Shown piece by piece: positions 37,067 to 59,020 of a stretch of DNA of 64,000 bases. The notes below the pieces were generated by a model. It saw only the letters and a program-made list of their open reading frames with translations. It was not told where the DNA came from and searched no databases. The position numbers and the translations under genes were made by a program. Origin of the DNA: Schizochytrium sp. TIO01 (lineage: Eukaryota; Protista; Bigyra: Labyrinthulomycetes); contig SMSO01000031.1 of the NCBI GenBank assembly GCA_004764695.1, positions 4,130,436 through 4,194,435 on the forward strand. The letters are read 5' to 3'. Within the stretch, counting starts at the first letter, position 1; each line of letters starts with the position of its first letter.

Positions 37067-37519
37067 TGTTGTTTATGCAGGGCCAAGTTGTTAAAGCTCC
37101 TGGTTGCTTGCTTCTGTAAAGAGTATCACAATTACCACCAACCCAACTTGATGCTAGGCTTCCCCTTCTCGTTCGAGCTTGCACCCTCGCAAGCTGCAAC
37201 AAGGGAGAGCCGTCTCTTGGCAAACTTTTGCCTCAAGCTTTTGCAAAATTCCACGGCGCGGTGCTACACGTAGCTTCTCGTATGCCATAATGCTCAATGC
37301 ATTTTGTGTGATTGCCTGTTCCAATTGAACGGATAGAAATGTATAATGGAGGTGTGTACCTTAATATTTATTAGTGTACCAACATCATTAAAAAGCGTAA
37401 CTAGGGACTAGTAGTACATGGTTTCCTTTCACTTTGAGTTTAACCTATAAAACTCGTAAAGCTTGCATTTCCTATGTCATGTGTGGCAAATGCCCAATTG
37501 CGGGTTAAATAACTAATCT

Positions 37520-37884
37520 GGGACTCAAAGTCAATTTTAAAATCATTTCCTTGGAAAAGTATCGCAAAAGGATGCGGATATTGATATCAGGATCGGCTAC
37601 GTATCTGCATTCTGGGCATTGTAAAATTTTGGTTGTTCCGAGCTTGTCGTGGATGGTACCACATTGATTGCATGTTTTTGAAGTGTAATTCCCTCAGCAA
37701 AGAACCTGATTACTCCAAAGGAAAGCTTAGTTCTGGGAATGAGCGCTTGGCGGAAGCCAATAACTCATCATTCGAGCTGTTTTACTACGGATCTGTCTTG
37801 ATAACTCGTTGACCATCTAGGAGGTTTCAAATTTCGGCAAAACGATAACACGGTAGTTTTCACAAAGCCAAAGTGCAAATCTGA
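37520..37884 (-). pseudogene. Fanzor2/TnpB C-terminal fragment (copy A)
   Basis: FALWLCENYRVIVLPKFETS*MV, RQIRSKTARMMSYW, FRQALI, then E..YTSKTCNQCGTIHDKLGTTKILQCPECRYVADPDIN.RILLRYFSK (zinc finger plus RuvC-III). Confidence 0.92.
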
Positions 37885-38208
37885 GTAGTCCACCCAATCG
37901 CGGCCTATTGAAGTTGACGCAGCAACCGATGTCTTTGTAGAGGACGGAGGCATCTGGACAGCCATGCCGGAGATTGCCAATCTGGCATTTGAAATTCTCT
38001 TTTGGCTAGGGGGAGGATTCTGGTGTAGATAAATATGGATGGTCTGTGCTGCGGGTACGCTCAACGTCGTCACTTTCGTACATCCGCTTGCTTCTGGGAA
38101 AGCGCCTGCAGTGCACTTGCTGAGACGCCAAACTTCTGGTTGAGGTACTTTGCTGGCTTGTACCGTAGGTTTGTTATACTTGTAGAATTTGGAGCTTAGT
38201 CATGCCAT
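37885..38208 (-). pseudogene. tnpA: IS607 TnpA serine recombinase fragment (copy A)
   Basis: Frame-broken translation: KPAKYLNQKFGVSASALQ (MerR-type HTH), PRSKRMYESDDVER (wing), FIYTRI, and YKDIGCCVNFNRPRLGGLL (consensus KDIGSGLNFKRxGL). Confidence 0.88.
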
Positions 38209-38663
38209 TTTCTAACCTAAGCTTCACTTCCTAACAAAGACGAAATTATTTTAATGTATTATTTACATGAATTAGACACTAGGTACCTACCGTTTGGAGG
38301 TTGTATACGCTCTAACGTTTCTAGAAGTACAGAAGAGGAAGGAAAAGAAAAGAAAGTAGAACTGGCATTAGCAAACGATAATGAGGCGCAAAGCCAATCG
38401 TTAATAAGGTAGGTGCCTGATGTTATTCAATGCATGTGTTTGAGTCAAGAGAGGGGTGAAAGGCTAAATATTCCCATGATTTCTGGGAAAGTCTGTCACA
38501 GATGACATGATATGAGAAAAGTACCAAAATAATTTACTGCGAACATTTTTCATTTCCACATCGTGCAAAGGTTCAGATGATAAAGAGAAGGTGCAATACA
38601 GTCAGGCGTCGAGGATGTTCAATTCTATGTATGACGCATATCCAGTTGAATATATATCTAGAT

Positions 38664-40517
38664 TTATTGTTGCTGCTGCTGTTGATATTTTCGCTCCAGC
38701 CATTGGTGTAACGCTATGAGCTGCTCCCGCGCATTATCCTCGTTATTCTGGGCAGTCTGTAGCTGTTGCATGATTGCTGGGGGGATTTTCTGTGCCTGTG
38801 CAACAATGTTATGTCTAAGCTCAAGATCGTCTGTACGGCCTGCTTCGTTGAGAAGAAGGTTTTGATAGATGCTGAAGTTTTGTTGAGCTGCACTCTTTTG
38901 CATTTGCGCCTCTTGGATCTGCTGAAAGAGGTGGTCGCGAATCATGGCCTCGTCGGGTGTAAGCTCGAACCCCTTGTCCATGCCTGAGTGCATTGCAGCA
39001 CTGGATGACTCGTCTTCCATAGAACGTTGTTGCTGCTGCAATTGTTGTTGTTGTTGTTGCTGCTGCTGCTGCTGTTGTTGTTGCTGCTGAAGAAGCTGCA
39101 TCTGCTGTTGCATCTGTTGCAGCTGCTGCTGCTGCTGCCGGTGATGTTGCATTTGCAATTGCTGCTGTTGCTGCTGCTGCTGCAATTGTTGTTGTTGTTG
39201 CTGTAGTGTCATTGAGTTCATCTGAGCAGGCTTTACAGGCATAGCACCCTGTGGGCTTCCATTGGAGCTGCTACTGTTGCTACTGTTGTTGTTGCTACTG
39301 TTATTATTTGTAGTTGTACTCTCAGCTTTGACAATATCTTGCTGCGGCTTCTTATTCGGTTTGGCTTTGGCCTTGGGTTTTGCTGCCGTAGCTTTTGCGG
39401 CCGCGGTAGTTTTATTTGCGGACTTGCCTTTGTTTTCTTGGTTTTTAGTTTCAGGTGATTTATTTGGGGCGGCAGCAGCAGCCTTTGGCGCAGCTTTGGA
39501 AGTACCTTGAATGGTTGTCGAGGAAGGCTGTACAGGTGCTGATTGATTTGTTGTATTCATTTGAGGTTTTGTGGAAGCTGGTGCCGCTGCTGGAGCTGGA
39601 GCAGGGTTGCTGGTAGTAGCGTTCTGTGCAGGAGGTGCGGCCTTAGCCTTCTTGTTCTTGGCCGCTGCTTTGCTTGCCGTTCCCGCCGGTTTATTTGCTG
39701 TTCCTGCAGGTTTATTTGTAACAGTAGTGGTCGCAGCAGGTGTGTTCGCCTTAGCAGAACTGTTGTTGTTCGCCTTTGCATTGACACCATTTCCACTGGC
39801 GGTCCCGTTAGTATCAGCAGCATTTTTGGCTTTATCCTGCTTGGTGTTGGTGCGCTTTGTTGCCCTTTCCTTGGTGGCAGCACCCTGCTGAGCTTTGGTA
39901 CGCTTCCTTTTGGGGGCTTGTGCAGGCGCGTTGGGAGCATCTGCAGCCTTGCCTGCTTGCTGGTCCTGGGTCGAGAGGGCCTCGATGGAAACGGCTACAA
40001 GAGCATCAAAGTCAAGCTGCTGCGTTGGGTCAGGTGGTTTTTGTGTGAGGATATTAGTATTGACGGCGGCAGCAGGAGCCTCTTGTCTTAATTTCTCCTC
40101 GAATTCAGTCTCTTGTCTCAAAAGTTGCATACGCAGGTTCATGATGGTTGCTTCTTGAGCTTTGAGAGTATCTTTTGTCTTTTGATGAGCGCTGCGCTCA
40201 GCCTTGAGTTGGTTTAGCATGTCTTCAAGTTGCGCCTCCAATTCTTTCTGGCGCTCCTTTGCCCCAACGAGCTCTGGAAGATCCTTTGCGAACTTGGCCT
40301 GCATTTCTGGACTTGCAAGGTCGACCTGGGAGATGTCTTGGTTGGTGCCTTTGGTGGCTTTGGTCCTCTGAATAAAGTTCATAAAATCCTGCGCACTGGT
40401 GCTCTTGATATGGTTGCCATTTGCCTTGCTCGGGGTTTTGCCATTGCTGTACATTTCCTCGAAAGGCGCTTCTCCCGGATTTCTCGCATCCGCGAGTGGC
40501 GATGTAGTGTTCGACAT
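38664..40517 (-). CDS. Uncharacterised coiled-coil, A/K/P-rich and polyQ protein with a conserved C-terminal helical domain
   Basis: 617-aa ATG ORF. Its C-terminal ~85 aa are paralogous to the C-terminus of the 59021 ORF. Confidence 0.8.
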   Translation of the reverse strand: MSNTTSPLADARNPGEAPFEEMYSNGKTPSKANGNHIKSTSAQDFMNFIQRTKATKGTNQDISQVDLASPEMQAKFAKDLPELVGAKERQKELEAQLEDMLNQLKAERSAHQKTKDTLKAQEATIMNLRMQLLRQETEFEEKLRQEAPAAAVNTNILTQKPPDPTQQLDFDALVAVSIEALSTQDQQAGKAADAPNAPAQAPKRKRTKAQQGAATKERATKRTNTKQDKAKNAADTNGTASGNGVNAKANNNSSAKANTPAATTTVTNKPAGTANKPAGTASKAAAKNKKAKAAPPAQNATTSNPAPAPAAAPASTKPQMNTTNQSAPVQPSSTTIQGTSKAAPKAAAAAPNKSPETKNQENKGKSANKTTAAAKATAAKPKAKAKPNKKPQQDIVKAESTTTNNNSSNNNSSNSSSSNGSPQGAMPVKPAQMNSMTLQQQQQQLQQQQQQQQLQMQHHRQQQQQLQQMQQQMQLLQQQQQQQQQQQQQQQQLQQQQRSMEDESSSAAMHSGMDKGFELTPDEAMIRDHLFQQIQEAQMQKSAAQQNFSIYQNLLLNEAGRTDDLELRHNIVAQAQKIPPAIMQQLQTAQNNEDNAREQLIALHQWLERKYQQQQQQ

Positions 40518-41194
40518 GCTGATCGTCAGCTTTCCTTCTAGTTCTAATGCTCCCTTTTACAGGCCAAGCACCTCTCGCTCTCTGAAGCACGAAATCCACA
40601 ATGTACTGCTGTGACTACTGCACTAGGCGCACTTCTTCCACAACTCCTCTGTATTGACTACTCTAAGCAATTAGATAAGAATGACCACTTTAAAACGAAC
40701 ACAATTGTTCAAAGAACGAAATGAACGAATTGAGAAAGAAAAAAAAAAGGGAATAAGAAAAACTAAACAAACAAAGCGAAACGAGAGCAGAAAGGAGCTT
40801 GAAAGCAATCTATATAGCGCTGCAAGTCTGCTGATCCTTGCCGCTCTTTGTCCAGGCCACTGACGGTCTGTACTGCTTTGCCTCAACTCTAGCCTCGGAG
40901 CTAAGAAAGCAGGTCGCTAGTTTTCTTGTGCTCTCTTAATCCTTCTACTACTACTGCTTCTGTTTCTTTGTCTCGGGTAATACTGCCGTCGCTCACTATT
41001 GAATTAATAAGTGCTGTGTCGCGGTGACTACGAAACGAAACCACGCTCGCGGTTGCGAGTCTTGCGTGCGTCCTGGCGTTGGGCTTCGGTATCCTCTAAG
41101 GCCCAGTATGCAAGCGCCAAGATATCCAATGCAAAGCAGGCTAGACTGCTGCGCAGGCGTGTGGGTGCTGTAGTTCGTGATGGTATTGACGACC

Positions 41195-41232
<38 letters not shown>

Positions 41233-41977
41233 AGTAGCACGCGCGATGGATGGGCCAATGGCAGCGAATGAGTCCGTGCGAAGCGGGTGGCGGGAGCCGG
41301 GCTGGGCACTACGTGTCTTGCGAGGTTCTCGGTCCCAGCTGCGTGTGCGTACGAGCGACTGCAGAGAGCCCCTCGGCTCTTGCGCGTTGCTGTTTCCGGG
41401 CGAGCAGCGATTCTTGTCTGGTCTTCAGCCAGGACGCCCTCGCCCACAAACAGCGAAGAGAAAGAATAATAAGGAAAGTGAATAAAAGTAAACAGGAAAT
41501 TCAAAGACAGAGGAAAAGAAGAAAGACTCTATTGCGACGGTACCTATGGAAGGAAGAAACATATTCAAAGTGAGGCGCTGTTTACTTGCATGTTCAAAGA
41601 CCCTTCCAATTCAAATTAAATTTAATTAAATTTAATTAAAACTACAAATATCATCATCATTGTTCATGTATATATATATATATACATAATATATAATTAA
41701 ATACAATCAATTCTCGCGTCGAAAACTGCTGTACGTACGTACGTACCCAGCTTTAAAAAAATTAAAATTAAAAAACAAAAAACAAAAAACAAAAAAACAT
41801 TCTTTAAAAGTAGAGGTTGCTTGTATTTGAAGCATAATAGAGACACCACCCTTCGTAGTGAAACCTCAACTTGCGAGTTCTAAGAATTAGCATTACAAGA
41901 GGTCTAGCAGAAGCAAGTTGATCTCTGCCTGCACACCTCGCTCGTTTCCTTCAAGCTCACGCAAGCAAGCTAGCTAG

Positions 41978-42010
<33 letters not shown>

Positions 42011-42210
42011 AAGCCTTAAGCAGGAGCATCACTCGCTCTCAACCTCCTTGCGGGCACAGGCGCACAATCGAAAGCAGCGATTCCTCTGGATGCTCATGAG
42101 TGGTCCATCCAGAGTCTCTTCGCGCCATTACAATGAGGAGGCGAATCACAGGTAGGGAGCTATAGGCATCATCCATTCCTGCTTACTTAAAGGCTCCTTC
42201 TTTCTTTCTT

Positions 42211-42290
<80 letters not shown>

Positions 42291-43538
42291 TCGGGCGCTG
42301 CTCAGAAGAAAAGAAAGAGCGAAAGAGAGAGAGAAAGAAACCTTCTCGGTTAATCAACGAAGATGACCAATAGCCTGCTCCTCTGACTGGCCGTGGTCCC
42401 GTCGGCAGTAAAGGCTCCGGGCACATGGCTTATACGCAGCAGGCGAGCTTAAAGACAACGAATGGTCTGCCCATCAGGCAATCAGCAGGCAATCAGTCAA
42501 TCAATCAATCAATCGATCGCTTATTTAATTAAACAAGTACGCACTATTCCTCACCAAAGCTCCTGAAATGCTCGCTGCTTTTTCTTCAAAGTTTTCTCCT
42601 TTTTTCTTTCTTTCTGAATTAAAAAACAATAATTTTAAAAAGTCAGCCTGAGTTAGATTATTCTTTATCAAGTTTCGAGGAGTTGACTCTGAGTGTTAGA
42701 AAGAAAGGCACTTTGTTTCCTCCTCCCTGTGGGGCCTTTTTTCTTTTCTTTCTTTCTTTTCTCCTTCTCGTAACCATCGACAGACACTTGCTCCATGCTC
42801 ATCAGAAGGGCGGCCAAGGCGATTAAACACGCATATAAAGGTGCGCAGAAGCTGGCAAGCCCGCAGAAACAGGCGTGTGCTGCGATTTCTTTTCCTACTT
42901 AACTGGTGGGCGCAGCGTTTAGTATAGATAGGTAGGTTCTCTCTCCCTACCTGGATATTCGTTTAGCAGCCTTTTAAAAAATCCGAGTGCTATGCATTTG
43001 TTGTTAATACTACTAATAGTAGTATTTGCGTTCGTTCGTATCATAGCAATGATAAATATTTATGGATCTCTCCTATGATGGTTGGGTTTGAAAATTAAGA
43101 AAACAAACCCTTCTAAGGTCACGAACCTCTTTTTCATGCAAAAAGTAACACCATCCATACCTAAAGCTTAGTTTTTGACTTGCCAGCACAATCGATCCCT
43201 CACCAAAACAGGCGCGTACACATGTTAGGACTACCTCGGCACTACATACATACGTGGGCCCCTACCTTCGTCCAAGCAAAAGAAGGCAGCAAGAGCTCTC
43301 AGTCTTCGAATGCAATGAATCGCCCACCAATCCGCACCTCTGCACCGTAGTCCTTTTCCCTATGCGGCGAGGTCAGGTCAGCGCTTCAGGATGAGAACCG
43401 CTCAAGAACATGTGTTCAAACGATACTCAGTAAACCTAGCTAGCTATCTACCTATGTATGGCATGTATGTATGTTTTGTAGTTTATTATCTGGGATCGAA
43501 CATGCACAGAGGAGGTCAGAGAGAGAGAATGAGATAAT

Positions 43539-43577
<39 letters not shown>

Positions 43578-44248
43578 TGATAAAGAAGCGAAGAAGCAGA
43601 AAACTCTTTCTTTGCGTCATCAATAATTAGTTAGTTAGGAGGAGTTAGTTTGAAGAGCCTCTTCACAGAAAGAAAGCTGTTGCGATCGCTGGACGGAGAG
43701 GCGGCCGAGGAGAAGGAGGGCGAAGAAGAGGACCAACGTGAGAGGGGGCAGCGCGTACGCAGAAGCCGTCCTGTTTGTTCTCCTCTTCGGCCGCCTCAAA
43801 GCTCTGTGCTCCGCCTGAAGGTTCTACTTATTGCATGTGTTATCTGTGTTGCCTGTGTGTTGTATGTATTCTCTCTGTATCCATCAAAACTCGTGCTTCC
43901 TCCTCTTTTTGAACATTTGCCGCTCATTTTAACTCAACTCCTCCTTCCTTCCTTCCTTCCTTCCCTAAACAGTCTTCATTCCATTAAAAGATAAAATGGT
44001 ATTTATAACTAACTAAGCGCAAATAACTCGGCAAAATCTGTTTATTCGCTACTAGCTCAAAAAACAAAGGAGGAAAAAAGGAGGAAAAAGAGAGAAAAAA
44101 GGGAAAAACTTACTTATCTTGAAACTAAGACGCCGAGAAGAAAAAACCTAACTCCATAGTGATTGTTAGGAGGACTGACCAAAGACAAAGAAGCAAGCGA
44201 ACACTGCGATCGATGCCAAGGCCAACAGCGCAGCAGCACGCCGGATCA

Positions 44249-44280
<32 letters not shown>

Positions 44281-44350
44281 AAAGCCGCAGCTGATTGGGG
44301 TATTCGCTCAGGCTTAGCGGCCGTCCTTCTCGCCGGGTCAGACTTCGCAG

Positions 44351-44383
<33 letters not shown>

Positions 44384-47352: not shown

Positions 47353-47384
<32 letters not shown>

Positions 47385-47943
47385 TTTTCAGTTCTACCCG
47401 TATACCGTAAAATTAGATTTCTTTAATTTATAAAATTATCACAAGTAAAAACAAATGATTAAAAAATGAATAAACAACAAACAGTATATATTAGAAATCG
47501 TAAAGAACAGTGACTATTTTCTTGAGCCGCTTTTCTTTTACAAATATAAATATTGCAGTAGTCAAAAAGTACTCTCGAGCCTGGTTTGTCTTTTAATTAA
47601 ACCTGCGCTGATTGCAAAGCCCCGAAGTCCTCCTTACAGTGAATGAGTGTGAGTGAACGAGTGAACGAGTGAATGAGTGAATGAGTGAGTGAGAGAGTGG
47701 GCAGGCCTTCTCGAAGACCCCGCCCTTCTTTCGCCAGAGAGTTTCGGGTTTCCAAGGCTGCCTTATATGGCCCATGTGAAGCCGAAAGCCCTCGAGGCGT
47801 TCTCCTCAGTAAGTTAGTGAAGCGAGTGAGTGAGTGAGTGAGTGAGTAAGTCAGTCAGTAAGTCAGTCAGCCAGCTTTCTTTCTTTCTTTCTCTCCTTCT
47901 TTCCTTCTTTCCTTCTTTCCTTCTTTCTTTCTACGGAGTGAGT

Positions 47944-48005
<62 letters not shown>

Positions 48006-49671
48006 CCAATCAATCTCCCTCTCCTTTCTTGAGTCAAGCTCCTTGCTTCCTCGCTTTGCTTCCTTCTTTCGGTCTTCTGATACACCCTCTCCTGTTGACT
48101 TGAATGGGCAAGCGGGTCGCCGTTCTCCGTAGAGTCGCCTTTCTTTCCCCATGTCGCAAATCCCCAAAAGTCCCAGCTTCTCCATCTCATTAAGGAAAAG
48201 AAATGAAAAGACGTCTTTAATTCTTCCTCTGCTTCTTCTTCTTCTTATTGTTATCATTGATCTTGTTCTTGTTGTTCTTGTAAAGAAGCTGAAAGCTGTA
48301 TAAACATAATTGGATTGAGGGATCATTAGCGGCAGGACAACATGGAAGTGTGAAGAGCGCGCTGCATTCCCTCCTCCCTCGTTCTCGAGAAGCTGACTGG
48401 CCCCGCAGAGGTGGACTACCCACCGTGTACCCACAGCCTGTGCAAGCGTCATGGATGGGAACGGTAAAACAGACGCTCTTCTGCCCTACAAGTCGTTCTC
48501 TTTTGCCCTTCTTGTGCGCGAGAATTAAGTCAGTCTCGTCATCGAAGTCCTTATTCCTGCTATTTCCCCCCGTTGCTGCTGATGATGCCCACACACCGGA
48601 TTCTTATTGGTGCTGTTGTTGTCATCACAAAACCACAAACAAGCCATGAATGGACCACTCGTTGCGCTGGCAGAAGCCAGGAATGAAGGACCTTCGGCCC
48701 AGTTTCGTGCATGCATTAACCATCTATGGTCTTGATTATTGCTGTTTCTCTGTTTCTTTTTTCTTTTCTTTTTTAATAGGAGACTTATTGTACTTTAAAA
48801 GTGAATCGTTATTTTTAAAAGCAAGGGCAATAAATCATTAAAACTCTAATCAACTATACATATGGGGTTCTTCCAAGTATTTCTAAAACAACAAAGACTC
48901 TGTTTGAAGCACTTGCGTTAGTTAGATCTTGTTTAGATCTCGTCGTCTCCAAGTCCGCACGTATTACGCCACAACAAGCAGTTAGTCAGTAGCTAGTCAG
49001 TTAGCTAGTTAGTTCACTAGTCGGATAAATAAGAGAGAGAGAGAGATAGTCAAAGGTCATAGGGCTGTAGTGAATTAATTGGCTGTAATTTGTGAAACCG
49101 CTTCTCTGTCAACTTGGATATCCATGCGGATACTTATTTTGCTTGTCGAGACCTGCATCCACAAGCTGTGAGACTATTCTCGTTTTATCTCCTCCTCTTC
49201 TTCTTCTACTTCTCGTTGTTGGACGCGCCCATAATAATAAGTCCGCTAAACAGGCACTCTTGGCTAAACGAAGGACGGATGCCTCCGGTTTTCAAGAATA
49301 GACCACCTTCAACGTTTAAATGTGAAGAGGCGTTCTCTCACTCTCACGAGTCAGGTAACTAACACTAACTACTCCACTTTATCAGGAGCACAAAGGTGAG
49401 TGAGCGAGACAGGGCTGGGCTCGTTCTAACAGGAAGATAGATACCTAGTGTCGTTAGGAATTTTAACTTATTAATAATTAATATAATATATAAATAAGTG
49501 CAAGCATAGCTTTCTTTCATTCCTTTCTCTTTTCTCTCTTTGTATTATTACTTCTGTTATTATTATTACATACGCATGTATTTAAGCTTTCGCGTCAAAG
49601 CCTGCCTTTCTTCTTCTATTCCAGCCATGAGGTCCTCTCTTAGTTACAAGGAAAGCATTCTCATTGGATCC

Positions 49672-49711
<40 letters not shown>

Positions 49712-52020
49712 CTTCCTTCCTTCCTTCCTTCACCCTTCCTTCCTCCCTTCCTTCCGTTAAAGCCTGCTATCCAGAACATTCACGAGAGCAGGCCCGAAGA
49801 ACAGGCAGCACGTGGCCTCTCTCTCAGCCAGCTGTCGCTCTCTCTCCCTTAACCCCTCATCGTAGAGCCCACCTAGCCACCCATTGGTTCAATCCAGTTA
49901 GTTGTATTGCGAATATTTCATACACGGTATTCATTCATCATACATGCATTCATGCATATAAACCATGCGGACGTACATATAAAGTTTGAGTGAGCACATA
50001 CACACATACAGGCAGATAATTTGCTTATAGTCCTCTATTTTTTTATTTATTTTTTAAACAAAGTTTTAATCTTAATTTTTAAGTTTAATTTTTAAGTGAG
50101 TAGGCCTACTCTGATGCTTTAAAAATATATATTACAAAATAACTCAATCGATTAAAAAATGAGAAACAGGACGAATCCACCCCGGCCAGAAAAGAACGAG
50201 GAGGCCGGCGAGTAGCTAGGAGGGAAGCTCGTCGCAGCTAGCTTAGTGTTCTCTGGCCTCACGAAGGCAGCGTTATTCGCTCCCAAGCAGAGAGACTGTG
50301 GCGCCGCTGCTGCTCGAGCTATTTTTATTTTTGTTTTTGAAGTGCCTGAGCCCCAGCTTTGCAGCCTCACTCTCGAAAATATGGTTCACCTCAAGTTCTC
50401 AATCCCCATTACCTAAAAGAAGCCTGAGCTGAGTTTTCTTACCCCGGCAGGTATCTATCTACCTAGCTAAAACCATAGAGGAAGCAAAGCAGCAAGCAAG
50501 CAGGCAAGCAATCATCAGTTTGTTTCCATTTCACCCCCACACCTCCCCGCAGCGGCAGTACATGGAAAGCTGAGCAGCGCAGAACAATCTCCGGAAGGGT
50601 AACAGCCCTTCCTTCCCTTGCTCTTGCTATTTCGCTTTTGCTCTTCCGCTTTTGCTCTTCTGCTCGCTTTCGCCTGCCTTTGCTTGCGGAGGCCTCCCTT
50701 GGAGCTGCTAAAGTCTCCTCCGGCCGGGTCAAAGGCCTTCCCCCCCGGCTCCGAGAAGGCAATCGACGCAACGCGCGATGGATGCGACGCGGCTGTCGAT
50801 CCGACGAGCCAGGCTCTAAAAGCACTAAGAAGGAGAAGAAAGAAAGGGGAACAGAGTGAGTGAACAAGTGAATAATAAGTGAGTGTGAGTGTGTGAGACT
50901 GAGTGGTGAGGGAGCGAATGAGTGAGGGAGCGAATGAGTGAGGGAGAGAATGAGTGAGTAAGAGTAAGTGGGTAACTAACTAGCTGAGTGGGGAGAGAAA
51001 TGAAGACGGATGAATGAATGAATGAATGAATGAATGAATGAATGAATGAATGAATGAATGAATGGAAACAACTTCAGGAACACCAGTGATGCGAGCCAGA
51101 CGGAATCACCGCTCAGGGTTAGTTAGCTAAAGTATGCAGGTACTCCTAGCTAGCTGTAGCTAAGCAAGCTAAAGGTATTTTTCCTTTTCTCTTTCTCGTT
51201 TTCTGGTTTTGAGTTCCTGTTCCAGTACCGGTCGCTTCCTTCTTTTGTTTCTTCTGCGGATAGACTCGTTTGATTAGAAAGCAAGTAAGCTAACAAGGAG
51301 GCAGGCAATAAAAGGAGGCAGGCAAACAGGCTGGCAGAACAAGCACGAGAACAGAACGGGGGGTAATCGTCTCTCCAAAAAGAGCAAGAAGGAGAGGAAG
51401 AAAGATAAAAGGCCTTTGCGTTCTCTCCCTTGATTCTATCAAGTGAGTCCCGTCGTTGCAAGTTTCCCACTGCGCTGCGCCTGTCGTCCATCTTTAAAGC
51501 ACTAAAAGTAAACAAAAACTGGTCTTCACGATAACATTAATCAATTAATTAATTAATTAATAATTTATTTATTTATTTATTATAGTTTATTATTATTATT
51601 ATTATTATTATTTAATAATGAACAAAGTTTTTCACCAGATGAGCCGGGTAGGTAGGTCCCGCTAATACCCTGATACCGCCTTGTAACCAAAGAAGATCAC
51701 GACATCGACGGCACAGAACTGTGTCTCCTATTGTCGTCAAGAAAAAGTGCGCAGGAGGTAGTAGGAAGAAAGACCGCACCAGAGGAAGCATCGTGGAGCT
51801 GGCGGAAAGAAAGCATGCATACCTTCTTTCGTCTAGGTTTAGCACAGGCGGGCGATCCGAGCAGAGCAGGGACGCTCGAGGCCTTTCATTACCGTGGCCC
51901 TCTCTTGCTTCCTGTCGTTAATACTCTTCTTCTTCTCCGTCTTCTGCTTCTCCGCGGCGGCTGCTGCTGCTGCCTGTGCTGGTTGAGCGAGGAAGTTCTT
52001 CTAATAAATCTGTTTTTCTC

Positions 52021-52075
<55 letters not shown>

Positions 52076-52894
52076 CTCTGCTTTTCTCTCTCCTTTTCTC
52101 TTGTTGTGATAGGTATGCTTGTTTTCCCACGCCTCCACAGTGCCTTCTCGCGGCTTGTTCTTTTTGGTCTCTCCGTGCCTACAGAGAGCCTCTGCCAGAC
52201 CTAGCCCGCCCTAACCCACATGACATACGTCCCCTCTCGCAGCTTTCACGGAAGTGAGGGGAGTGTGTTGCGGTCCGTCGTCGGCCTTTCTCCTGCAGGA
52301 GTGGCGGTCCTACGTATGGGTAACACTAACCGTAAGAGTGCCCGGAATGCCTGCCCTACTGCCAATTCCCCTTTGTTTTATTTTAAAATATTAACATTTT
52401 TCAAATTATATATACATAGCAAGAGTATAGTTTTTTTTTCTCTCTCTCTCTTAATCTCAGAAAAATAATCAGACAATAAATTGAAAAGACTGGGGCTAAA
52501 AAACAAAATGAAGCGCATTGAATAGAAAATTTTACATTTTTCTCTCTAAATAAAAGATTCTTCTGAGGATTTCAAAGGTTGTTTTGATTGCTGAGAAAAT
52601 AAGGTCCGCTTGACTGCTACAAACGTACTTTGGCCAGAAATTGTCTGCGCTGTGGCGGTCATTTTGAGTCTTTCCAGCTCCTCGCGAAGGCTTCGAGCTT
52701 TGCGTTCTTTCCTGCATTACCCATGAAAACGTTACAACTTCTATCATGATAACCTCAAATGGTAGTGACTGTTCCAGATAAATGGTATACATATGATAAT
52801 TCTATAAGAAGTATAGGTTTCGTAAGAAAATGGGATGGCCAGGGAACCTGGCCACCAAATCCAAACCCTACAATGAAGCAAACATTTAATTCAA

Positions 52895-53290
52895 GATTTC
52901 TTGCATTCGGCTCTGCGTAAAGTACAGGGTTATCTTTTGCCTAAATGTGAAAGCTCAGCAAGTTAACAAGAAGCTAATGAGTTGGATCAAAAATCAAGAC
53001 AGCTCGAATGATGTGTTGTTTGTTGGCTTCCGACAAGCGCTCATTAAGAAAGCCGAGGATTCCCCCCTGCGACTGGTGTAAACTAATTATCTTCTGAGAT
53101 GAGACGATTGCACTTCAAAGCCATGCAATTAATGTGGTACCACCCACGACAACCTCGGAACATCCAAGGTTCTCAAATGTCATACCAAAAAATGCCAATA
53201 CGTAGCCAATCTTGATATCTATATACGCTGCCAGAGGCATCAAGCTACGCTACCTATCCAAGGACATGGTTGAAGAGTTGTCTTTGAGTC
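52895..53290 (+). pseudogene. Fanzor2/TnpB C-terminal fragment (copy B)
   Basis: RLCVKYRVI/LPKCESS, KIKTARMMC, FRQALIKKAEDSP, WCKLII..DE, CTSKPCN*CGTTHDNLGTSKVLKCHTKKCQYVANLDI and YAARGIKLRYLSK. Collinear with copy A. Confidence 0.9.
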
Positions 53291-53387
53291 GCGGGCTAAA
53301 AGCTAAGCCGCGATTGGGCCTTCGACCTGCTTTGCAACCATATATGAAATGCAAGCTTTGCAATTTTTATAGGTTAAATTCAGAGTG
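53285..53387 (+). ncRNA. Putative omegaRNA scaffold / element right end (homologous tracts at about 37430-37530 minus and 56600-56649 plus)
   Basis: Tract downstream of the Fanzor C-terminal motifs, conserved between copies, with imperfect stem-loops. Its position matches TnpB/Fanzor right-end RNAs. Expression is not shown. Confidence 0.55.
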
Positions 53388-54422
53388 TTAAGTAGCAAAA
53401 TGCGCCTCGGTACTACCTTCCACTTTAAGATATGAGTTGTGTTACTCTCTACTTTATGTAGAAGAACGGTGCTTACAGCACATACGCTGAAAGTAGTTGT
53501 CTCGTTACAGTACTTTGCTTGTTTGATTGTTTGATTGTTTGATTGTTTGATTGTTGCTGCTGCTGCTACTGCTATCGTATTAAAGAGATCCATGGCGGAG
53601 AAGGCGCCTGTAGGAGTCCTGGCTTTCAGAGACGATGGCGGTGGCGCTTTCCGTAGTCTGCAGAGGAAGAAGCCGCAGACGAAGTAGCTGCAAATGGCTA
53701 TTGTGTAGCTGACGGGGGGAGAAAGTCAACAATCAAAACGATTAATTTAAAAAAAGCTTGTTTCTTTAATTAAGCTTTTTGGTTTAAAAAAATTATTTAT
53801 AATTAAAAAAAAAAAAAAAAACTCTCAACTACTGATCAATCTGCCTGTTGAAGAAAGTCAAGCAATTAACCACCTCGCCCAATCAGCCCAAGGACGAACG
53901 AAGGAACAGAGCGTACGAAAGGTGAAGAGAAGGTCAATTCGGACGAGTAAGAAAACTGAGGGATGCGATTTCCCGGCGGCGAGCTTCAACTTGGACCGCG
54001 CGAGCATCTTGCGGTGCCGATGTGCCATCATCGTAGAGATCTGTTTGTTGCTCTCCTTTCCTGCCTTCTTCTTACCTTCTTGACTTTATCTCGTTTCGAA
54101 AATTGGAAAATATCTTCATCTATTGTTACTTTAACTCTTTTCTTTCTTGGCAGGTACTCGTAGGTAGTAGGTATAGGGGCCTGATTAATCCATTTTGAAA
54201 TACGTTCTTGCTTACTTTCATTACGCAAAATGAACCCAACCTCGAGCACGTGCGCACAAAAACACTTTTGATTAATATTCTTAATTACCATTTAATATTT
54301 TTATAATCTATTTTTTTTAATACCCATATGATCATCGCGTTATCTCTCTCTCTCTTTTTATCCAAGGAAGCGATTTCATGAAAGTGGGTGGGTGGTAGGC
54401 AGCCCCTACATACTACTACTAG

Positions 54423-54453
<31 letters not shown>

Positions 54454-55570
54454 GCTACGACGCAAAAAGAAAAAGAAAAAAAAGACTTCGAGGGCCTCGA
54501 GGGAAAAAAACGCAACCGCTCTGTGGCTTCTGCCGGCTTTCCTTCGAGCGGGCGGCCGGCGTGCGCCCTTGCCAGCGCCGCTGCCGGCCACGCCTTGGCC
54601 TCACGGCGAGGCGTCGCTGGTGCCGGCTCCAGAGGGATATTCGCGCTCTCCGAACATCTGGCCTCCACTCCGCAAGTACCGGCCCAGCGGAGCACCGCAG
54701 AGAAGAGCAGAGCAGAGCAGAGCAGAGCGATAAAAGAATGCCGCGTGAATGAAACCACGATTTTTCAATTGTTCCTTTTTTTTTTTTTTTTTTTTTTCTC
54801 CTTTTTTTCTCTCCTTTTTTTCAAGATTAAAAAACTGCAGGAAGAAGTTTAAACACTTTCTTCTTTCATTTCTTTTAATACTGTAGAAAGAAAATGAAGA
54901 AGAGTGGGGTTTTATTTAAAGGTAATTTTGAGCCTTCGCTGACTGTGGCGATGCAGTATAAAGATAGATAGGCCTACGCAGGGATAATAAGAGGAAGGAA
55001 AGGATTGGAAACTTGAGGACAGATCGCAATAGGGAGGGCAACAAATAGGAGAAGAAGAGCTTTGCCGACTGACCGAACGGCGCTGCCTGCTGCCAGCGAG
55101 TAAGCCTTCGCGCAGACGGGGCGAGGAGTCTCAAGGCGAGAGCCTGAGGAGAAGAAGCCTCGAGGTCGCAGGTCCTCCTTAGCTAGCTAGCTAGCTAGCT
55201 AGCTAGCTTGATTGAGATAGTCGCAGCCGGAGCTAGCTAGCTACTTTTAAAGTCAGCTTCAGACAATCGTCCATTGAAAGCTCGCTCTGGCAAGCAGAAC
55301 GAAGAGGCCTTGGCAGTTCGTGCCGCATTGTAAGCGAGGCCCATTCTCTTCTTGCGTGCGTTTGTTGCTTGCTTGCTTACGTGCTTGCTTGCTTGCTTAG
55401 TTGGCATCTACTTTTCGTTGGGGCTGTCAAGCATGAGCGGATGAACCACGTGAGGTACCTATGAAAACGTTGGAACTTAACCTCCAAATGGGACGTATGT
55501 TTCATAAAGCCTAAGTGATATATTATAATGACTTAGGCCTTTTGTTGAGAAGTGAAGGCGAGGTAAGAAA

Positions 55571-56293
55571 ATGGCACGCCGAAGGAATCACCAAGCTCCA
55601 AACACTACAAGTGAAGCAAACCTTCAACGCAGGCTAGGAGCAGCTCGATAAAAGCGTCGGTGTCTCGGCAAATACACTTCAGGTGCCCCCGGCAGAGACA
55701 TGCGCATCACATGTATTCGGGGGCCGCAATCAACGCTGCACTCATCGTACAATCATCTATGCCAGAGTGCCCTCTGCCAAGCAACAAGAAGGCTTCGAAC
55801 GCCAGATTGATGATCTTCAGAGTGCATATGCAGACGCATCCGCCGCCTACAAAGATATCGGTATCAGAGGCAACTTCCTGTAAGAGCGGCGGAGTTGGCC
55901 AGGTTGTGGTCATGCACCGCAACCGACTTGCGCGAGTTGTCATCGACCTCCTTGAGCAGCTTGCCGAAGAAGAAAATGGCAAACTCGTGGTACACGGCCA
56001 AAATGTGTATGCCGACGACTCCGACACCTTTACAAGGGACCTCCTTGGAAATCACCACCGGCTTTCTGGCGTCGCAGCAGCATGGAAAACAAGCAGCGCA
56101 AACTATACGGCGTCAACGCAGCAAGGAAGAAGCGAGCGTGCGTGAAGGCACACAAGACGACCAAAAAGGAGTGCAATTTAGTTCGTGCATAGAGGATCCG
56201 CGTCTATCCAACGTAAGGCCAGTGCAACTCACTCAGAAAGTGGTTTGGCGTTTCCAAAAGAGCTTACAACGTCGACGTTGCCTTTCATTATGA
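55571..56293 (+). pseudogene. tnpA: IS607 TnpA serine recombinase pseudogene (copy C)
   Basis: Across frames: VGVSANTLQ (HTH), RTIIYARVPSAKQQEGFERQIDDLQSAY..KDIGIRGNF, GVGQVVVMHRNRLARVVIDLLEQL..GKLVV, RDLL/EITTGF..HGKQAA. These match the IS607 consensus YARVSS.KQ..DLERQ, DIGSG.N, VVV.H.DRL.R and EDLLAI...F....G. The catalytic Ser codon is CCC (Pro) at 55770. Confidence 0.92.
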
Positions 56294-56600
56294 TTTGCAA
56301 AGGTAAAAATAAAGTCGTGGCCCTGTATCAAGATACATGCGTTAGGAAGGATCCTAAAACGCTTCAAATGCTGATAGACGAGAAAGGTGATCCTAAAATC
56401 TTCGGCGATAGCTATGGAGAAGTGAAAGTAGTACGCCTTAAAGAAGCTGTGATCGCTCCTGATTGGGTCTTCGAAGTACCACAAGCTGTGCGCAATCCAG
56501 AGATCGTTAATATTTTTTCGAAGCTACCGATTTTGGTCAAGGCAAAAATGGGAATTTGATGTCCAAAAGGAAAGATGCCATTCGCTCTTCTCGCCCCACG
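56082..56600 (+). pseudogene. Fanzor2/TnpB N-terminal fragment (copy C)
   Basis: An ATG at 56082 inside the tnpA 3' end reads MENKQRKLYGVNAARKKRACVKAHKTTKKECNLVRA*RIRVYPT*GQCNSLRKWFGVSKRAYN, the TnpB N-terminal motif K.RLYPT..Q...L..WFG..R..YN. PDWVFEVPQAVR follows later. Confidence 0.88.
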
Positions 56601-59020
56601 TCAACATAGAAATCTCAAGCGTTACAACTTCTATAGGTTAGTTACTAGGCAATTTACCTAGTAGGTACCTACTGGTGCATATTTCTTTTCAAGCACTAGT
56701 AAATTATACATAAAGAACTCCAAATAAAATGGCTTTGTATACCTCCACCTCATTCGTTTCATGCGGGTCCTGATAGCGAGGCAGTGAGTCCTTCGATTTG
56801 GCTTCAAAAGCAGCGCAGGACCGACCTCTGCAAAGGCCTGTCTGGGATGGAGTCGCGCTGCGCAGCTGAACGCGGATGCCTCGCGTGGAGCCATCGCTGA
56901 TGATGTCTAGGATTGCGAGAGAAAGGCCTTTTCTTCGCCCTCCTTCTTTCTTTGCTTTCTTTCTTTCTGCTTCTTTGGGCCTCATAATGATCCTCCTATC
57001 AATTAATCTTAAATAAAGAAGTTGGCTTTTTGTTTTTGTTTTTGTTTGTTTTGCTTTTAACCTCTTCCTGTTTATTTTCATTATAAGTTAGTTTATAAAA
57101 CAGTTTTGAACAATAAATGGAAAGCTACACACCAACCACCTCCTTGATGAGTAGAACCAAAGCTTCAATTGACCAAGTTTTTTTATTTTAATAAATCAGC
57201 ATAACTTCTTGAGCTTTGATCTCCGTTTCGGTGCTGTGCCAACAAGATTTTTATTTCCGTTCTGCATGCTCTTTCTACAGAAAGAATGAAGACACCTAGA
57301 CCAAGATTCTATCTTCTTTCACCTGAAAGTCAAAAGTGTTTTCTCCTTCAGAGGAAATCCCGAAAGATGGATCAGCACTACTTTTTCACTTTTCTCTTTC
57401 TTTCAGCCGCCGCTTTCCTCATCTTTTCTAATTTCCGTATTTGTGAAAGAACTTCCACAAAGTGTGTCTACTTTGAACTGAGGGTCCCCACAGGAGTCGG
57501 CGTGTGTACTGCGAAGTCACGGCTGGTTGCGGACCCCAGTGGGAACTCTCGCTCGCGCTTTTATCATTACTTTTTTTCTTTTTTTTAAGTACTTTATCCC
57601 TCTTGTCTTAAAACAAAAATATAAAAAAAAAATATTAAAAAATCTGCTCTTTTCATTCCATAACTAACAATAATAACAACAACTGAAATAAATATTACGT
57701 GTTCACCACCTTGATAATTTACCAAATAAATAACAGAAACTATTTTTTTTGAAGTTAATTAAAATAATATCTACTGATAAAGTACTAAGAAGCATCAACG
57801 ACTTTCAGAACATTAGCGGCAGGCTCTCGACAGCCGAACGACGGTCTTTGTACAGAGCAGTGCGAGGAAATAGCAAATAGAAAGGGTCGAATGATAGGAG
57901 AGCCGTGGCGAGGAGAGTGCAGAGGCTCACATGATAGAGTAGAGAGTAATCTATCCTCTGTTTTCTTTCTTTTTTAGCCATCCATCCATCCATCCATCCA
58001 TCATGACTCTTCTGCATGGGTACCTTACCTACCTAATTAATACCTAGCAGTGCCTAGTGACAAATAGAGTGAGCTCTTTCTTGGTGTTGTTGTTGTTGTT
58101 GTTGTTGTTGTTGTCTTCTCTCAAGCTAGAAGAACACAAAAAAAGGTTGTAGATAGGTAGGTGGTTACTACCTGGCCTAGCTTATGCTAGTTCTGCTGCT
58201 TGGAATTACGCTTTTGCTTATTGCGCGTTCTCATCATGCGAACCAGATCACACAGCCACCGAGTATTACAGTTAGTCAAGTTGTGTTTGGAAGGTCCTGA
58301 ACCCTCGCATGGAGTGACTGTTTTGATCGACCACACTGTCATTGTCCTTTGGTCTTTGGACAATCAACAATTGCAAAATCAACCCTGTAAATCCCTTCAA
58401 AGTGATTGTTACTGGCAATCACATACACAAAACCAAGTTGACGCTAGAGTTGAGTGAGATACGAAAGTGACAGTGAGACATCGTCTTAGACTCATTAAGA
58501 TTCTCTTGGTCCATTTTCAGCATAACGTAGACAAAAAAAATAACACCAGCAGGCCACAGAAAATAAACAGGGTCGGCAATTCAACACAGAACAGTCTCCT
58601 GCAAGTTTGTATAATGAGTGCATTCAATTCTACAAGGTTCACCATCTTTAGATAATTTTTTTTTAAATTTGTTTATAATAGTAAGTTGTGTGACGTAAAT
58701 TCTGGAGTGCAGTCATTCGAGTATATATACTTTCTACTACGCAGCCGCACATACATACATATATGCATGGGCGAAATCGGAATTTGGAATTTGGAATTTG
58801 GCCTTTCAACTTTCGGCTTTCAGCAGAAGATAGAGTAAAAAGGAATTAGGTAACGATTCATAAAAGTCTTTGTTTACTGCAGCAAATATCTTTCCTTGTA
58901 CGCTGTCGCCCACGTTTACACACCCAAACAAACTTTTGTTCAGAATGGTAGGTTGCGCAATGGCTTTTCATGACGACAATCAATGGTATACATATATATA
59001 TTTGCCATTCTCAACATTAC

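What the first reader, a model, noticed from the sequence alone, without database searches (positions are those of the whole stretch)
37430..56649. Hidden family of IS607-Fanzor2 (eukaryotic RNA-guided nuclease) elements: three complementary decayed copies within 20 kb
Seen: three loci share a left end, a tnpA start (GT[A/T]AGAAAATGG...AC[C/T]AA.(C)TCCAAA..CTACAA) and a right end, but each has a different internal deletion. Copy A (37430-38330, minus) is the TnpA HTH plus catalytic start fused to the Fanzor C-terminus. Copy B (52718-53387) is a tnpA stub plus the Fanzor C-terminus. Copy C (55455-56649) is a near-complete tnpA plus the Fanzor N-terminus. None is an intact ORF, so annotation would miss them. 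Established: IS607 elements pair a MerR-HTH serine recombinase with TnpB, and their eukaryotic/giant-virus descendants are Fanzor2 OMEGA nucleases guided by a right-end RNA. Inference: three copies in 64 kb imply a past genome-wide burst of this family in a probable thraustochytrid. An intact, possibly uncharacterised Fanzor2 may survive elsewhere in the genome, in relatives or in an associated virus.
Basis: partly seen in the sequence, partly recalled or inferred. Interest (0 to 1): 0.93.

Follow-up and report, generated by a model that had tools for sequence, protein, structure and literature searches.

The report
Dead IS607-Fanzor2 transposon copies; live relatives
The three loci are dead, internally deleted copies of an IS607-type transposon carrying a Fanzor2 RNA-guided nuclease in a thraustochytrid genome, and intact, transcribed, near-identical copies of the same family sit elsewhere in that genome.

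Summary
All three loci keep the family's left end and right end, and each lacks a different internal stretch.

The interpretation also holds. The intact relatives encode a 232-aa IS607 transposase (NCBIfam 142.9 bits, cutoff 110). They also encode a TnpB-like nuclease whose best solved relative, by sequence and by fold, is mimivirus Fanzor2.

Refinements:
- **Copy A's deletion is not private.** Eleven other loci share the same junction. A therefore belongs to an old ~0.9-kb non-autonomous subfamily that spread after the deletion.
- **B and C carry private deletions.**
- **All three are dead.** They have stops and frameshifts, and they have lost the catalytic Ser, Glu and Asp.
The genome holds at least 23 young 2.2-kb copies. 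Fourteen have an open Fanzor ORF and nine have both ORFs open. There is transcript evidence.
- **The host is a thraustochytrid**.

This is a new member of a known kind. The scan noted this family many times elsewhere in this genome.

Side observation: the nuclease reading frame stays open across the whole of tnpA, in frame +1. This holds from cyanobacterial IS607 to giant viruses to this protist.

The parts
38220..38330 (-). Copy A, left end (non-coding, up to the tnpA start)
   Evidence: The left-end pattern hits 38309-38330. It aligns with the left ends of 11 sister copies and of the reference.
37883..38219 (-). Copy A, tnpA remnant (TnpA aa ~1-133: HTH and start of the catalytic domain). 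It has one frame change, and the catalytic-Ser motif RVSS now reads RILP.
   Evidence: tblastn maps TnpA aa 9-39 to 38195-38103 and aa 45-133 to 38119-37883. Translation.
37541..37882 (-). Copy A, Fanzor2 C-terminal remnant (aa 497-618: RuvC-II region, Zn ribbon, RuvC-III). It has three in-frame stops. The invariant Glu (E564) is now Gly, and RD is now PD.
   Evidence: tblastn 52% identity, E 6e-34. Pfam Cas12f1-like_TNB 4e-8. The deletion junction at ~37882/37883 is shared by L022-L032.
37430..37540 (-). Copy A, right end (non-coding; presumed omegaRNA scaffold 3' part; hairpins decayed)
   Evidence: Alignment A2. Ref 2154-2196 aligns to 37474-37432.
52717..52894 (+). Copy B, left end plus the first ~21 codons of tnpA
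   Evidence: Left-end pattern at 52717-52738. Ref 88-175 aligns to 52804-52894 at 77%.
52911..53271 (+). Copy B, Fanzor2 C-terminal remnant (aa 502-618). It has a frameshift near 53221 and stops. E564 is now Asp, and RD is now LD.
   Evidence: tblastn E 1e-17. BLASTN to copy A 68% over 494 nt. No other locus shares B's junction.
53272..53387 (+). Copy B, right end. Its hairpin 1 keeps pairing through a U-A to C-G change.
   Evidence: Alignment A2.
55455..55570 (+). Copy C, left end
   Evidence: Left-end pattern at 55455-55476 with 1 mismatch. Ref 62-166 aligns to 55518-55623 at 80%.
55571..56167 (+). Copy C, near-complete tnpA (aa 1-230) spread over three frames. The catalytic Ser is replaced (ARVPS).
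   Evidence: tblastn pieces aa 1-21, 73-124, 135-192 and 191-230 lie in frames 1, 2, 3 and 1. Pfam Resolvase 1.5e-4 on 55638-55880.
56168..56572 (+). Copy C, N-terminal part of the Fanzor2 core (IRVYPT... HTH/WED-REC, up to aa ~324). No RuvC part is left.
   Evidence: Ref 962-1209 aligns to 56324-56572. The translation shows IRVYPT*GQCNSLRKWFGVSKRAYN.
56575..56651 (+). Copy C, right-end remnant. It directly follows a private ~0.9-kb deletion (ref ~1210 to ~2125).
   Evidence: Read directly: the sequence CACGTCAACATAGAAATCTCAAGCGTTACAACTTCTATAGGTTAGTTACTAGGCA matches the family right end.

Best explanation
The three loci are dead relics of one family of IS607-type DNA transposons in the nuclear genome of a thraustochytrid.

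Structure of a complete element. It is 2.2 kb long. It has a ~110-nt left end. It encodes a 232-aa TnpA, made of an N-terminal MerR-type HTH and a serine-recombinase catalytic domain. It encodes a Fanzor2-type TnpB-like nuclease whose core starts where tnpA stops. It finishes with a ~100-nt right end that, together with the 3' end of the nuclease gene, should encode the guide (omega) RNA.

The three window copies:
- Copy A belongs to an old ~0.9-kb non-autonomous subfamily. One deletion joined tnpA codon ~134 to nuclease codon ~490. The product kept both ends and was then copied to many sites by TnpA supplied in trans.
- Copy B is either a further-deleted member of that subfamily or an independent deletion.
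- Copy C is an old autonomous copy with a private ~0.9-kb deletion.
- All three have since decayed. They are roughly 30% diverged from each other and from the live lineage, and they encode nothing functional.

The same family persists as at least 23 young copies, nine with both genes open. These are transcribed and look recently mobile.

Mechanism, inferred from bacterial IS607 and from characterised Fanzor2 and not shown here. TnpA excises the element and reinserts it by serine recombination across a 2-bp overlap, without inverted repeats or target duplications. The Fanzor2-omegaRNA complex, guided by the flank next to the right end, cuts empty donor sites so that repair from a sister copy restores the element.
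For: Shown here:
- Shared ends and mapping of the three copies.
- TnpA is an IS607 transposase.
- The nuclease is closest to ApmFz2/TnpB rather than Fanzor1. It satisfies the Bao-Jurka Fanzor/TnpB motif D416...T567-S568-x-x-C571/C574/C589/C594...R600-D601 (PMC3627910).
- Glu564 is invariant and aligns with the 'rearranged' catalytic E467 of ApmFNuc. The canonical RuvC-II Glu position varies across relatives (PMC10530073).
- Twelve loci share A's junction. They show uniform ~77% pairwise identity, with no excess conservation of the right end.
- Census: at least 23 copies at 80-100% identity to the reference. Six are at 98-100%, and the young copies fetched have unrelated flanks. Fourteen nuclease ORFs and 10-11 TnpA ORFs are open.
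- Five young copies share a 294-bp insertion that breaks tnpA yet lie at different sites. This indicates mobilisation in trans.
- Transcription: two MMETSP transcripts are 96-98% identical to copies here. In RNA-type contig sets X6 and X9, depth of 250-970 is confined to the element and is zero on both flanks. The flanks are covered in DNA run X1.
- In X1, one contig skips from just before the left end of L010 to beyond its right end. This is consistent with an unoccupied site in another strain.
- No terminal inverted repeat and no target duplication in 20 young copies.
Against: - No activity was tested: not transposition, not omegaRNA, not cleavage.
- The right-end hairpins are kept (85.7% of cells paired against 32-45% for slid controls), but covariation does not exceed the shuffles. 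There is no Rfam match.
- X6 and X9 are only guessed to be RNA, and they are contigs. Transcript ends and a discrete omegaRNA therefore cannot be seen.
- The X1 'empty site' joint lands 77 nt beyond the right end, so it is not a clean empty site.
- Whether B derives from the A-type subfamily cannot be decided, because its own deletion removed the diagnostic junction.
- The Fanzor hits to NCBIfam TnpB models fall below their curated cutoffs (93.3 against 100).
Confidence: 0.88

Rival explanations
1. All three copies are independent insertions of autonomous elements that each later suffered a private deletion and decayed in place.
For: C's junction and B's junction are not found in any other locus scored. 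All three are old and full of stops.
Against: A's junction (TnpA ...LLD joined to nuclease ...TEIHRKLALW) is present in 11 further loci on 6 contigs. Many TnpA-like fragments in the genome end at residue ~135-138. B's right breakpoint (ref 1736) lies about 25 nt from the A-type junction (about ref 1710).
Confidence: 0.1
2. The copies arrived as parts of an integrated giant-virus or mirusvirus genome rather than by transposition within the host genome.
For: Fanzor2/IS607 elements are common in giant-virus contigs: 66 IMG/VR loci. A protein with an EsV-1-7 cysteine-rich motif lies at 60085-61620 of the window.
Against: Each copy is bounded by its own left and right end. Ordinary cellular genes surround them: coronin-like WD40, aldehyde dehydrogenase, ANAPC3, P450. 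The best viral relative is only 35-37% identical. Young copies sit at many sites with unrelated flanks.
Confidence: 0.04
3. The short A/B-type copies are retained because they still work, for example as stand-alone omegaRNA genes served by Fanzor2 from intact copies, or as truncated TnpA regulators.
For: The A-type subfamily keeps exactly the part expected to hold the omegaRNA, namely the last ~390 nt of the nuclease gene plus the right end, together with the TnpA HTH. Hairpins 1-3 can still form in most copies. RNA-type contig depth rises over the last ~300 nt of the element.
Against: Pairwise identity among the 12 A-type copies is flat at 0.73-0.81 and is lowest (0.60) at the right terminus. 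There is thus no sign of purifying selection after insertion. Hairpin 1 is disrupted in copy A. Reading frames are broken. The depth rise can be explained by the larger number of genomic copies sharing that part.
Confidence: 0.05

Closest known systems
ISvMimi-type IS607 elements of Acanthamoeba polyphaga mimivirus with Fanzor2 (ApmFz2/ApmFNuc, protein L79; PDB 9b0l)
   Same: It is the best solved relative by sequence (E 2e-18) and by fold (Foldseek 1.7e-16, TM 0.63 on the target). It is associated with an IS607 TnpA. The catalytic Glu sits just before the TSKTC zinc-ribbon motif: E564 here, E467 there. The N-terminal region is disordered with a basic NLS-like stretch (PMC10530073).
   Different: Only about 19-20% identical. 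Here the element is chromosomal in a protist, with dozens of copies. tnpA and the nuclease lie on the same strand with overlapping frames. Only ~100 nt separate the stop codon from the right end, whereas ApmFNuc shows ~200 nt of conserved non-coding sequence past the ORF.
Cyanobacterial IS607 elements (ISArma1-like; e.g. Cylindrospermum stagnale TnpB P0036)
   Same: Same gene order and strand. The TnpA is an IS607 equivalog. The TnpB frame is +1 relative to tnpA and stays open across it.
   Different: About 30% identical. The prokaryotic TnpB is annotated as 409 aa starting at the end of tnpA. No nuclear-localisation requirement.
IS607-like sequences of eukaryotes described by Gilbert & Cordaux 2013 (Acanthamoeba Ac3/Ac4, Phytophthora, Ectocarpus) and by Bao & Jurka 2013 (ACa-1/2, CRv-1)
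   Same: A prokaryote-derived IS607 with ORFA plus ORFB in nuclear genomes, stramenopiles included. Most copies are fragments and a few are intact. There is an N-terminal extension of ORFB (100 aa in Ac3) (PMC3673617, PMC3627910).
   Different: The host group is Labyrinthulomycetes. No paper in the library pairs 'Fanzor' with 'thraustochytrid'. Copy number is far higher, with a young near-identical cohort and an amplified non-autonomous deletion subfamily.
Fanzor1 (e.g. SpuFz1, PDB 8gkh)
   Same: A eukaryotic TnpB-derived RNA-guided nuclease with a RuvC domain and a Zn ribbon.
   Different: Not detected by sequence at E up to 1, and rank 32 by fold. Fanzor1 rides on eukaryotic transposon superfamilies, not on IS607 TnpA.
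Non-autonomous deletion derivatives of DNA transposons (MITE-like families)
   Same: The A-type subfamily keeps both ends, has lost coding capacity, shares one deletion junction, and is present in many copies.
   Different: Mobilisation would be by a serine recombinase, without inverted repeats or target duplications. The retained internal part coincides with the presumed guide-RNA region.

Membership tests
IS607-family transposon | TnpA is a serine recombinase with an N-terminal MerR-type HTH (DNA-binding domain before the catalytic domain) | tested here: met
   Intact relative L010:1285-1983. NCBIfam NF033518 transpos_IS607 scores 142.9 bits (cutoff 110) over model positions 3-187 of 187. 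Pfam Resolvase 1.5e-19 at aa 83-216 and MerR_1 at aa 28-66. PDB matches are ISC1926, ISC1904 and IS1535 TnpA. Window copies keep recognisable pieces only.
IS607-family transposon | No terminal inverted repeats and no target-site duplication | tested here: met
   The 20 young copies with both ends defined show no duplicated flank. The two termini are not inverted repeats of each other. Only a subterminal 23-nt, 78% imperfect inverted pair is present.
IS607-family transposon | tnpB-type gene downstream of tnpA on the same strand, frames overlapping | tested here: met
   'Two orfs, which often overlap' is stated for IS607 in PMC6188088.
IS607-family transposon | Recombination across an identical dinucleotide at the element ends and the target (GG in H. 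pylori IS607) | tested here: inconclusive
   The right end finishes ...CTAAG-AG, and 16 of 20 left flanks carry CAG within 7 nt of the left end. The old family shows ...CTAAG-TG and CTG-TAC.... This fits an AG/TG overlap, but the first 1-4 nt of the left end vary and no clean empty site is available.
Fanzor2 (eukaryotic/viral TnpB clade) | TnpB/Fanzor motif D-X(125,275)-[TS][TS]-X-X-C4 zinc finger-X(5,50)-RD (Bao & Jurka 2013) | tested here: met
   Intact ORF: D416; T567-S568-K-T; C571, C574, C589, C594; R600-D601. These columns are invariant among 16 relatives. In window copies A and B the RD Asp context and E564 are mutated.
Fanzor2 (eukaryotic/viral TnpB clade) | Closer to Fanzor2/IS607 TnpB than to Fanzor1; N-terminal HTH_OrfB_IS605 | tested here: met
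   PDB sequence search: 9b0l (ApmFz2) at 2e-18, no Fanzor1 hit. Foldseek: 9b0l rank 1, ISDra2 TnpB rank 2, SpuFz1 rank 32. Pfam PF12323 at 4e-9. No full phylogeny with Fanzor1 references was built.
Fanzor2 (eukaryotic/viral TnpB clade) | Encoded in a eukaryotic or eukaryotic-virus genome, within an IS607-type element | tested here: met
   The window carries ordinary eukaryotic genes. Its aldehyde dehydrogenase is 80% identical to that of Hondaea fermentalgiana. tnpA is adjacent.
Fanzor2 (eukaryotic/viral TnpB clade) | Right-end omegaRNA and RNA-guided DNA cleavage next to a TAM | not testable with these tools
   Indirect evidence only. RNA-type contigs cover the right end. Three hairpins are retained without significant covariation. 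No Rfam family matches.
Functional element (for the three window copies) | Open reading frames and catalytic residues intact | tested here: not met
   All three show stops and frame changes. TnpA catalytic Ser: RVSS reads RILP in A and RVPS in C. Nuclease E564 reads Gly in A and Asp in B. RD reads PD in A and LD in B. C lacks the whole RuvC part.

The most novel reading that the evidence does not exclude
The nuclease of this family may be translated from a start near the 5' end of tnpA. Its first ~190 residues would then be encoded entirely in the +1 frame of the transposase gene (dual coding). This arrangement appears to be under selection from cyanobacterial IS607 through giant-virus elements to this protist. 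In a eukaryote it would let one capped mRNA yield both proteins by leaky scanning, and it would supply the nuclease with its basic NLS-like stretch (aa 176-189).

Support:
- The +1 frame of tnpA holds 55 stops against 446 in frame +2 across 30 viral and thraustochytrid genes. It holds 12 against 479 across 40 cyanobacterial genes.
- Synonymous-codon shuffles give 3-10 stops per gene where 0-1 are seen.
- tnpA third positions diverge 0.30 against 0.49 in the non-overlapped tnpB part.
- Six of the nine internal ATGs of tnpA are in the nuclease frame.

Against:
- The tnpA AUG has a strong context (aaaATGg).
- Residues 1-87 are predicted disordered.
- Bacterial annotation starts TnpB at the end of tnpA.
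- There are no protein data.
- 'Overlapping ORFs' in IS607 are already mentioned in the literature, without the extent being given.
Probability: 0.35. Interest if true: 0.65.

Novelty: new member of a known kind. Interest (0 to 1): 0.5.

Why it matters
The three window copies are ordinary transposon fossils. Their value is that they led to a family that looks alive: an autonomous IS607 element carrying both TnpA and Fanzor2 in a eukaryotic nuclear genome, alongside tnpA-broken copies mobilised in trans and an older non-autonomous subfamily.

What Fanzor2 does for its transposon in a eukaryote is still open, whether homing, retention or something else. Whether prokaryote-derived IS607 truly transposes in eukaryotic nuclei was also raised as an open point (PMC3673617).

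From my own knowledge, thraustochytrids can be cultured and some can be transformed. If so, this family offers a natural system in which to test both questions. It also offers natural, uncharacterised Fanzor2 orthologues, about 425 aa of core plus an N-terminal extension, for biochemical study.

Tried and rejected
The contigs of the metagenomic and dinoflagellate homologues could not be fetched. I used IMG/VR and genome-contig loci instead.
- **RNAalifold** on 17 right ends gave no convincing consensus, -2.4 kcal/mol. My hand-drawn three-hairpin structure is well paired, but its covariation does not exceed shuffles. I therefore do not claim structural selection.
- **Rfam:** no match on the intact element.
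- **In-frame chimera rejected.** I considered that copy A encodes an in-frame TnpA::Fanzor chimera. In the 11 sister copies the junction is out of frame. A's fused frame comes from a further 19-nt private deletion.
- **Eukaryote-specific overlap rejected.** I considered that the long tnpA/nuclease overlap is an innovation of eukaryotes. Cyanobacterial IS607 shows the same open +1 frame.
- **A-type right end.** I looked for excess conservation of the right end in the A-type subfamily, as a sign of stand-alone guide-RNA function. None was found.
- **Reads.** Transcription of A, B and C themselves is untested.

Full report
**1. Observation**

The window is G000:C30:4130436-4194435 of a 64-Mb, 37-contig eukaryotic assembly.

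A left-end pattern taken from the family hits the window three times only: 38309-38330 (-), 52717-52738 (+) and 55455-55476 (+). The right ends finish at 37430, 53387 and 56649-56651.

BLASTN of each locus against the window gives A versus B 68% over 494 nt (E 2e-40). A versus C gives two pieces (E 2e-8 and 3e-7). No locus has an intact ORF.

**2. What the sequences are**

Pieces were searched without reading through stops. C 55638-55880 hits Pfam Resolvase (1.5e-4). A 37508-37693(-) hits Cas12f1-like_TNB (4e-8).

A DNA search of the host genome with copy C found dozens of related places, including intact elements. I used L010:1172-3369 as the reference. It is 2,198 bp long. tnpA lies at ref 114-812 (232 aa). 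A long nuclease ORF lies at ref 238-2094 (618 aa).

- **TnpA.** It matches NCBIfam IS607 transposase above the curated cutoff (142.9 against 110), Pfam Resolvase plus MerR, and solved IS607-family TnpA structures.
- **Nuclease domains.** It has HTH_OrfB_IS605 and the TNB zinc-ribbon domain.
- **Nuclease relatives.** The best PDB sequence hit is mimivirus L79, which is Fanzor2 (9b0l, 2e-18). An AlphaFold model (pLDDT 70; core 80-94) has 9b0l as top Foldseek hit (1.7e-16). ISDra2 TnpB is second and Fanzor1 SpuFz ranks 32.
- **Nuclease motif.** The Bao-Jurka motif is complete: D416, TSKT, four Cys, R600-D601 (PMC3627910).
- **Catalytic Glu.** The canonical RuvC-II Glu position (PKFETS) varies among 16 relatives. 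E564, just before YTSKTC, is invariant and aligns with E467 of ApmFNuc. That residue is the 'rearranged' glutamate described for Fanzors (PMC10530073).

**3. Anatomy of the three copies**

| Copy | Reference parts kept | Protein content |
|---|---|---|
| A | ref 50-487 + 1732-2196 | TnpA aa ~1-133 joined to nuclease aa 497-618 |
| B | ref 88-175 + 1736-2192 | about 21 tnpA codons joined to nuclease aa 502-618 |
| C | ref 62-1209 + last ~75 nt | TnpA aa 1-230 in three frames, nuclease up to aa ~324 |

All three are dead. The catalytic-Ser motif RVSS reads RILP in A and RVPS in C. E564 is Gly in A and Asp in B. RD is PD in A and LD in B. C has no RuvC part at all.

**4. Copy A is a member of an amplified non-autonomous subfamily**

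Searching the genome with A returned many loci that align contiguously across A's deletion junction. I aligned 11 of them (L022-L032, on six contigs).

All share the same junction...CTACTGGAC | TACCGAGATTCACCGCAAG... This is TnpA ...LLD joined to nuclease ...TEIHRKLALW. Many TnpA-like fragments in the genome likewise stop at residue ~135-138. The deletion therefore happened once, and the ~0.9-kb product was copied afterwards.

In the sister copies the junction is out of frame. A's apparent in-frame fusion comes from an extra 19-nt deletion.

Pairwise identity among the 12 copies is 0.73-0.81 along the body and 0.60-0.68 at the termini. This indicates an old burst followed by neutral decay, with no sign that the guide-RNA part was preserved.

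B's junction and C's junction are not seen elsewhere. B's right breakpoint lies ~25 nt from the A-type junction, so descent from that subfamily is possible but not provable.

**5. The family in the genome**

With the intact element as query, at least 23 places are 80-100% identical over most of its length. Six are at 98-100%. Dozens more are at 66-73%.

Protein searches show 14 full-length nuclease frames without stops and 10-11 full TnpA frames. Nine elements have both open.

The young copies fetched have unrelated flanks, no target duplication and no terminal inverted repeats. Five young copies share a 294-bp insertion that breaks tnpA but sit at different loci. They were therefore moved in trans.

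**6. Expression and polymorphism**

Two MMETSP transcripts encode 601- and 617-aa proteins that are 96-98% identical to copies here.

In two contig sets guessed to be RNA (X6, X9), depth of 250-970 covers only the element, from about nt 1259 to 3369 of L010. Depth is zero on both flanks. In DNA run X1 the flanks are covered. An oligo-dT RNA run of another organism code holds two short contigs.

In X1, one contig joins position 1170, just before the left end, to 3446. This suggests a site without this copy in another strain. The joint lies 77 nt beyond the right end, so it is not a clean empty site.

These are contigs. Transcript ends and a discrete omegaRNA cannot be read from them.

**7. Ends and RNA**

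The right end finishes ...CTAAGAG in young copies and ...CTAAGTG in old ones. CAG lies within 7 nt upstream of the left end in 16 of 20 young copies. The old copies mostly show CTG-TAC....

This fits a 2-bp crossover (AG or TG) like the GG of H. pylori IS607 (PMC6188088), a TAM-like target preference, or both. It is unresolved.

A motif TGCAAGT-N4-GCAAA occurs in direct orientation near both ends (D1). It is a candidate TnpA site by inference only.

The last 210 nt fold with z = -2.45. Three hairpins are kept in 17 copies: 85.7% paired against 32-45% for slid controls. Covariation does not exceed shuffles. Rfam has no match.

**8. Host and relatives**

A window aldehyde dehydrogenase is 80% identical to that of the thraustochytrid Hondaea fermentalgiana, the closest named hit.

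The nearest nuclease homologues outside the genus are 44-48% identical. They are metagenomic proteins and one from the dinoflagellate Durusdinium trenchii. The best of 66 giant-virus loci is 35-37% identical. No close viral donor was found.

No paper in the library pairs 'Fanzor' with 'thraustochytrid'. IS607-like elements in other stramenopiles and in Acanthamoeba are known (PMC3673617, PMC3627910).

**9. Side observation: the nuclease frame is open across all of tnpA**

In L010 the nuclease frame is open for 662 codons. It starts about where tnpA starts, and no Met lies between aa 138 and 232. All 15 homologues of 601-697 aa aligned with it carry the extension, with invariant positions inside it.

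- **Giant-virus loci.** In the 42 giant-virus loci (38 distinct sequences) where a tnpA match lies on the same strand as the nuclease gene, the nuclease frame is always +1 relative to tnpA. In 36 of them it overlaps tnpA by 344-722 nt.
- **Stop counts.** tnpA has 55 stops in frame +1 against 446 in frame +2 across 30 genes. Synonymous shuffles expect 3-10 per gene.
- **Cyanobacterial IS607.** The same pattern appears: 12 against 479 stops in 40 genes.
- **Third positions.** tnpA third positions diverge less than those of the non-overlapped tnpB part: 0.30 against 0.49.
- **Internal ATGs.** Six of nine internal ATGs of tnpA are in the nuclease frame.

The literature says only that IS607 ORFs 'often overlap' (PMC6188088, PMC3673617).

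Whether the extension is translated is untested. The first 87 residues are predicted disordered, and residues ~90-190 are partly ordered.

**10. Verdict**

The window copies are fossils. The family is a new member of the known IS607-Fanzor2 kind, with a live-looking lineage and an old non-autonomous subfamily.

The scan had already noted this family at many other places in this genome: 134 notes fitted the words searched. Those notes were not used as evidence.

Noticed in passing
L010:1280-1983 (intact copy); L039-L104 (giant-virus loci); L105-L159 (cyanobacterial IS607): The TnpB/Fanzor2 reading frame is open across essentially the whole tnpA gene, always in frame +1. Stops are strongly depleted: 55 against 446, and 12 against 479, relative to frame +2. 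tnpA third-position divergence is also reduced. This suggests a long dual-coding overlap conserved from cyanobacteria to eukaryotes.
   Followed up: partly
L009, L016, L194 and two further copies (G000:C5:1372762, C36:1883486, C31:5077233, C13:2774988, C13:5456259): Five young copies share a 294-bp insertion at ref 195/196, inside tnpA codon ~27. It contains (CTAAC)n repeats and a short palindrome. tnpA is broken, the nuclease ORF is still open in three of these copies, and the copies lie at different loci. This implies mobilisation in trans.
   Followed up: partly
G000:C13:3962467-3965396 and G000:C13:5818725-5822243 (L017, L019): Two young copies sit head-to-head against, or inside, the left end of old decayed copies. 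Old copies also cluster, for example three within 19 kb in this window and many between 8.7 and 9.35 Mb of contig C30. This may reflect insertion preference for resident ends, or local hopping.
   Followed up: no
L010:1308-1334 and 3320-3346; same motif in window copies, e.g. 53340-53360: The motif TGCAAGT-N4-GCAAA occurs in direct orientation just inside tnpA near the left end and again in the right end. It is highly conserved in young and old copies. It is a candidate TnpA binding site.
   Followed up: no
Left flanks of 20 young copies (L006-L020, L184-L194): CAG lies within 7 nt upstream of the conserved left-end block in 16 of 20 copies. The 1-4 nt between CAG and the block vary between otherwise 95-100% identical copies. 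This could be a target or TAM-like motif, or a hypervariable terminus.
   Followed up: partly
window:60085-61620 (-): A 511-aa ORF carries an EsV-1-7 cysteine-rich motif (Pfam PF19114, 6e-8). This motif is known from a brown-alga virus and from stramenopiles.
   Followed up: no
window:38664-40517 (-): A 617-aa ORF next to copy A has very long poly-Q/poly-N and Ala/Lys/Pro-rich low-complexity tracts. No domain search was run on it.
   Followed up: no
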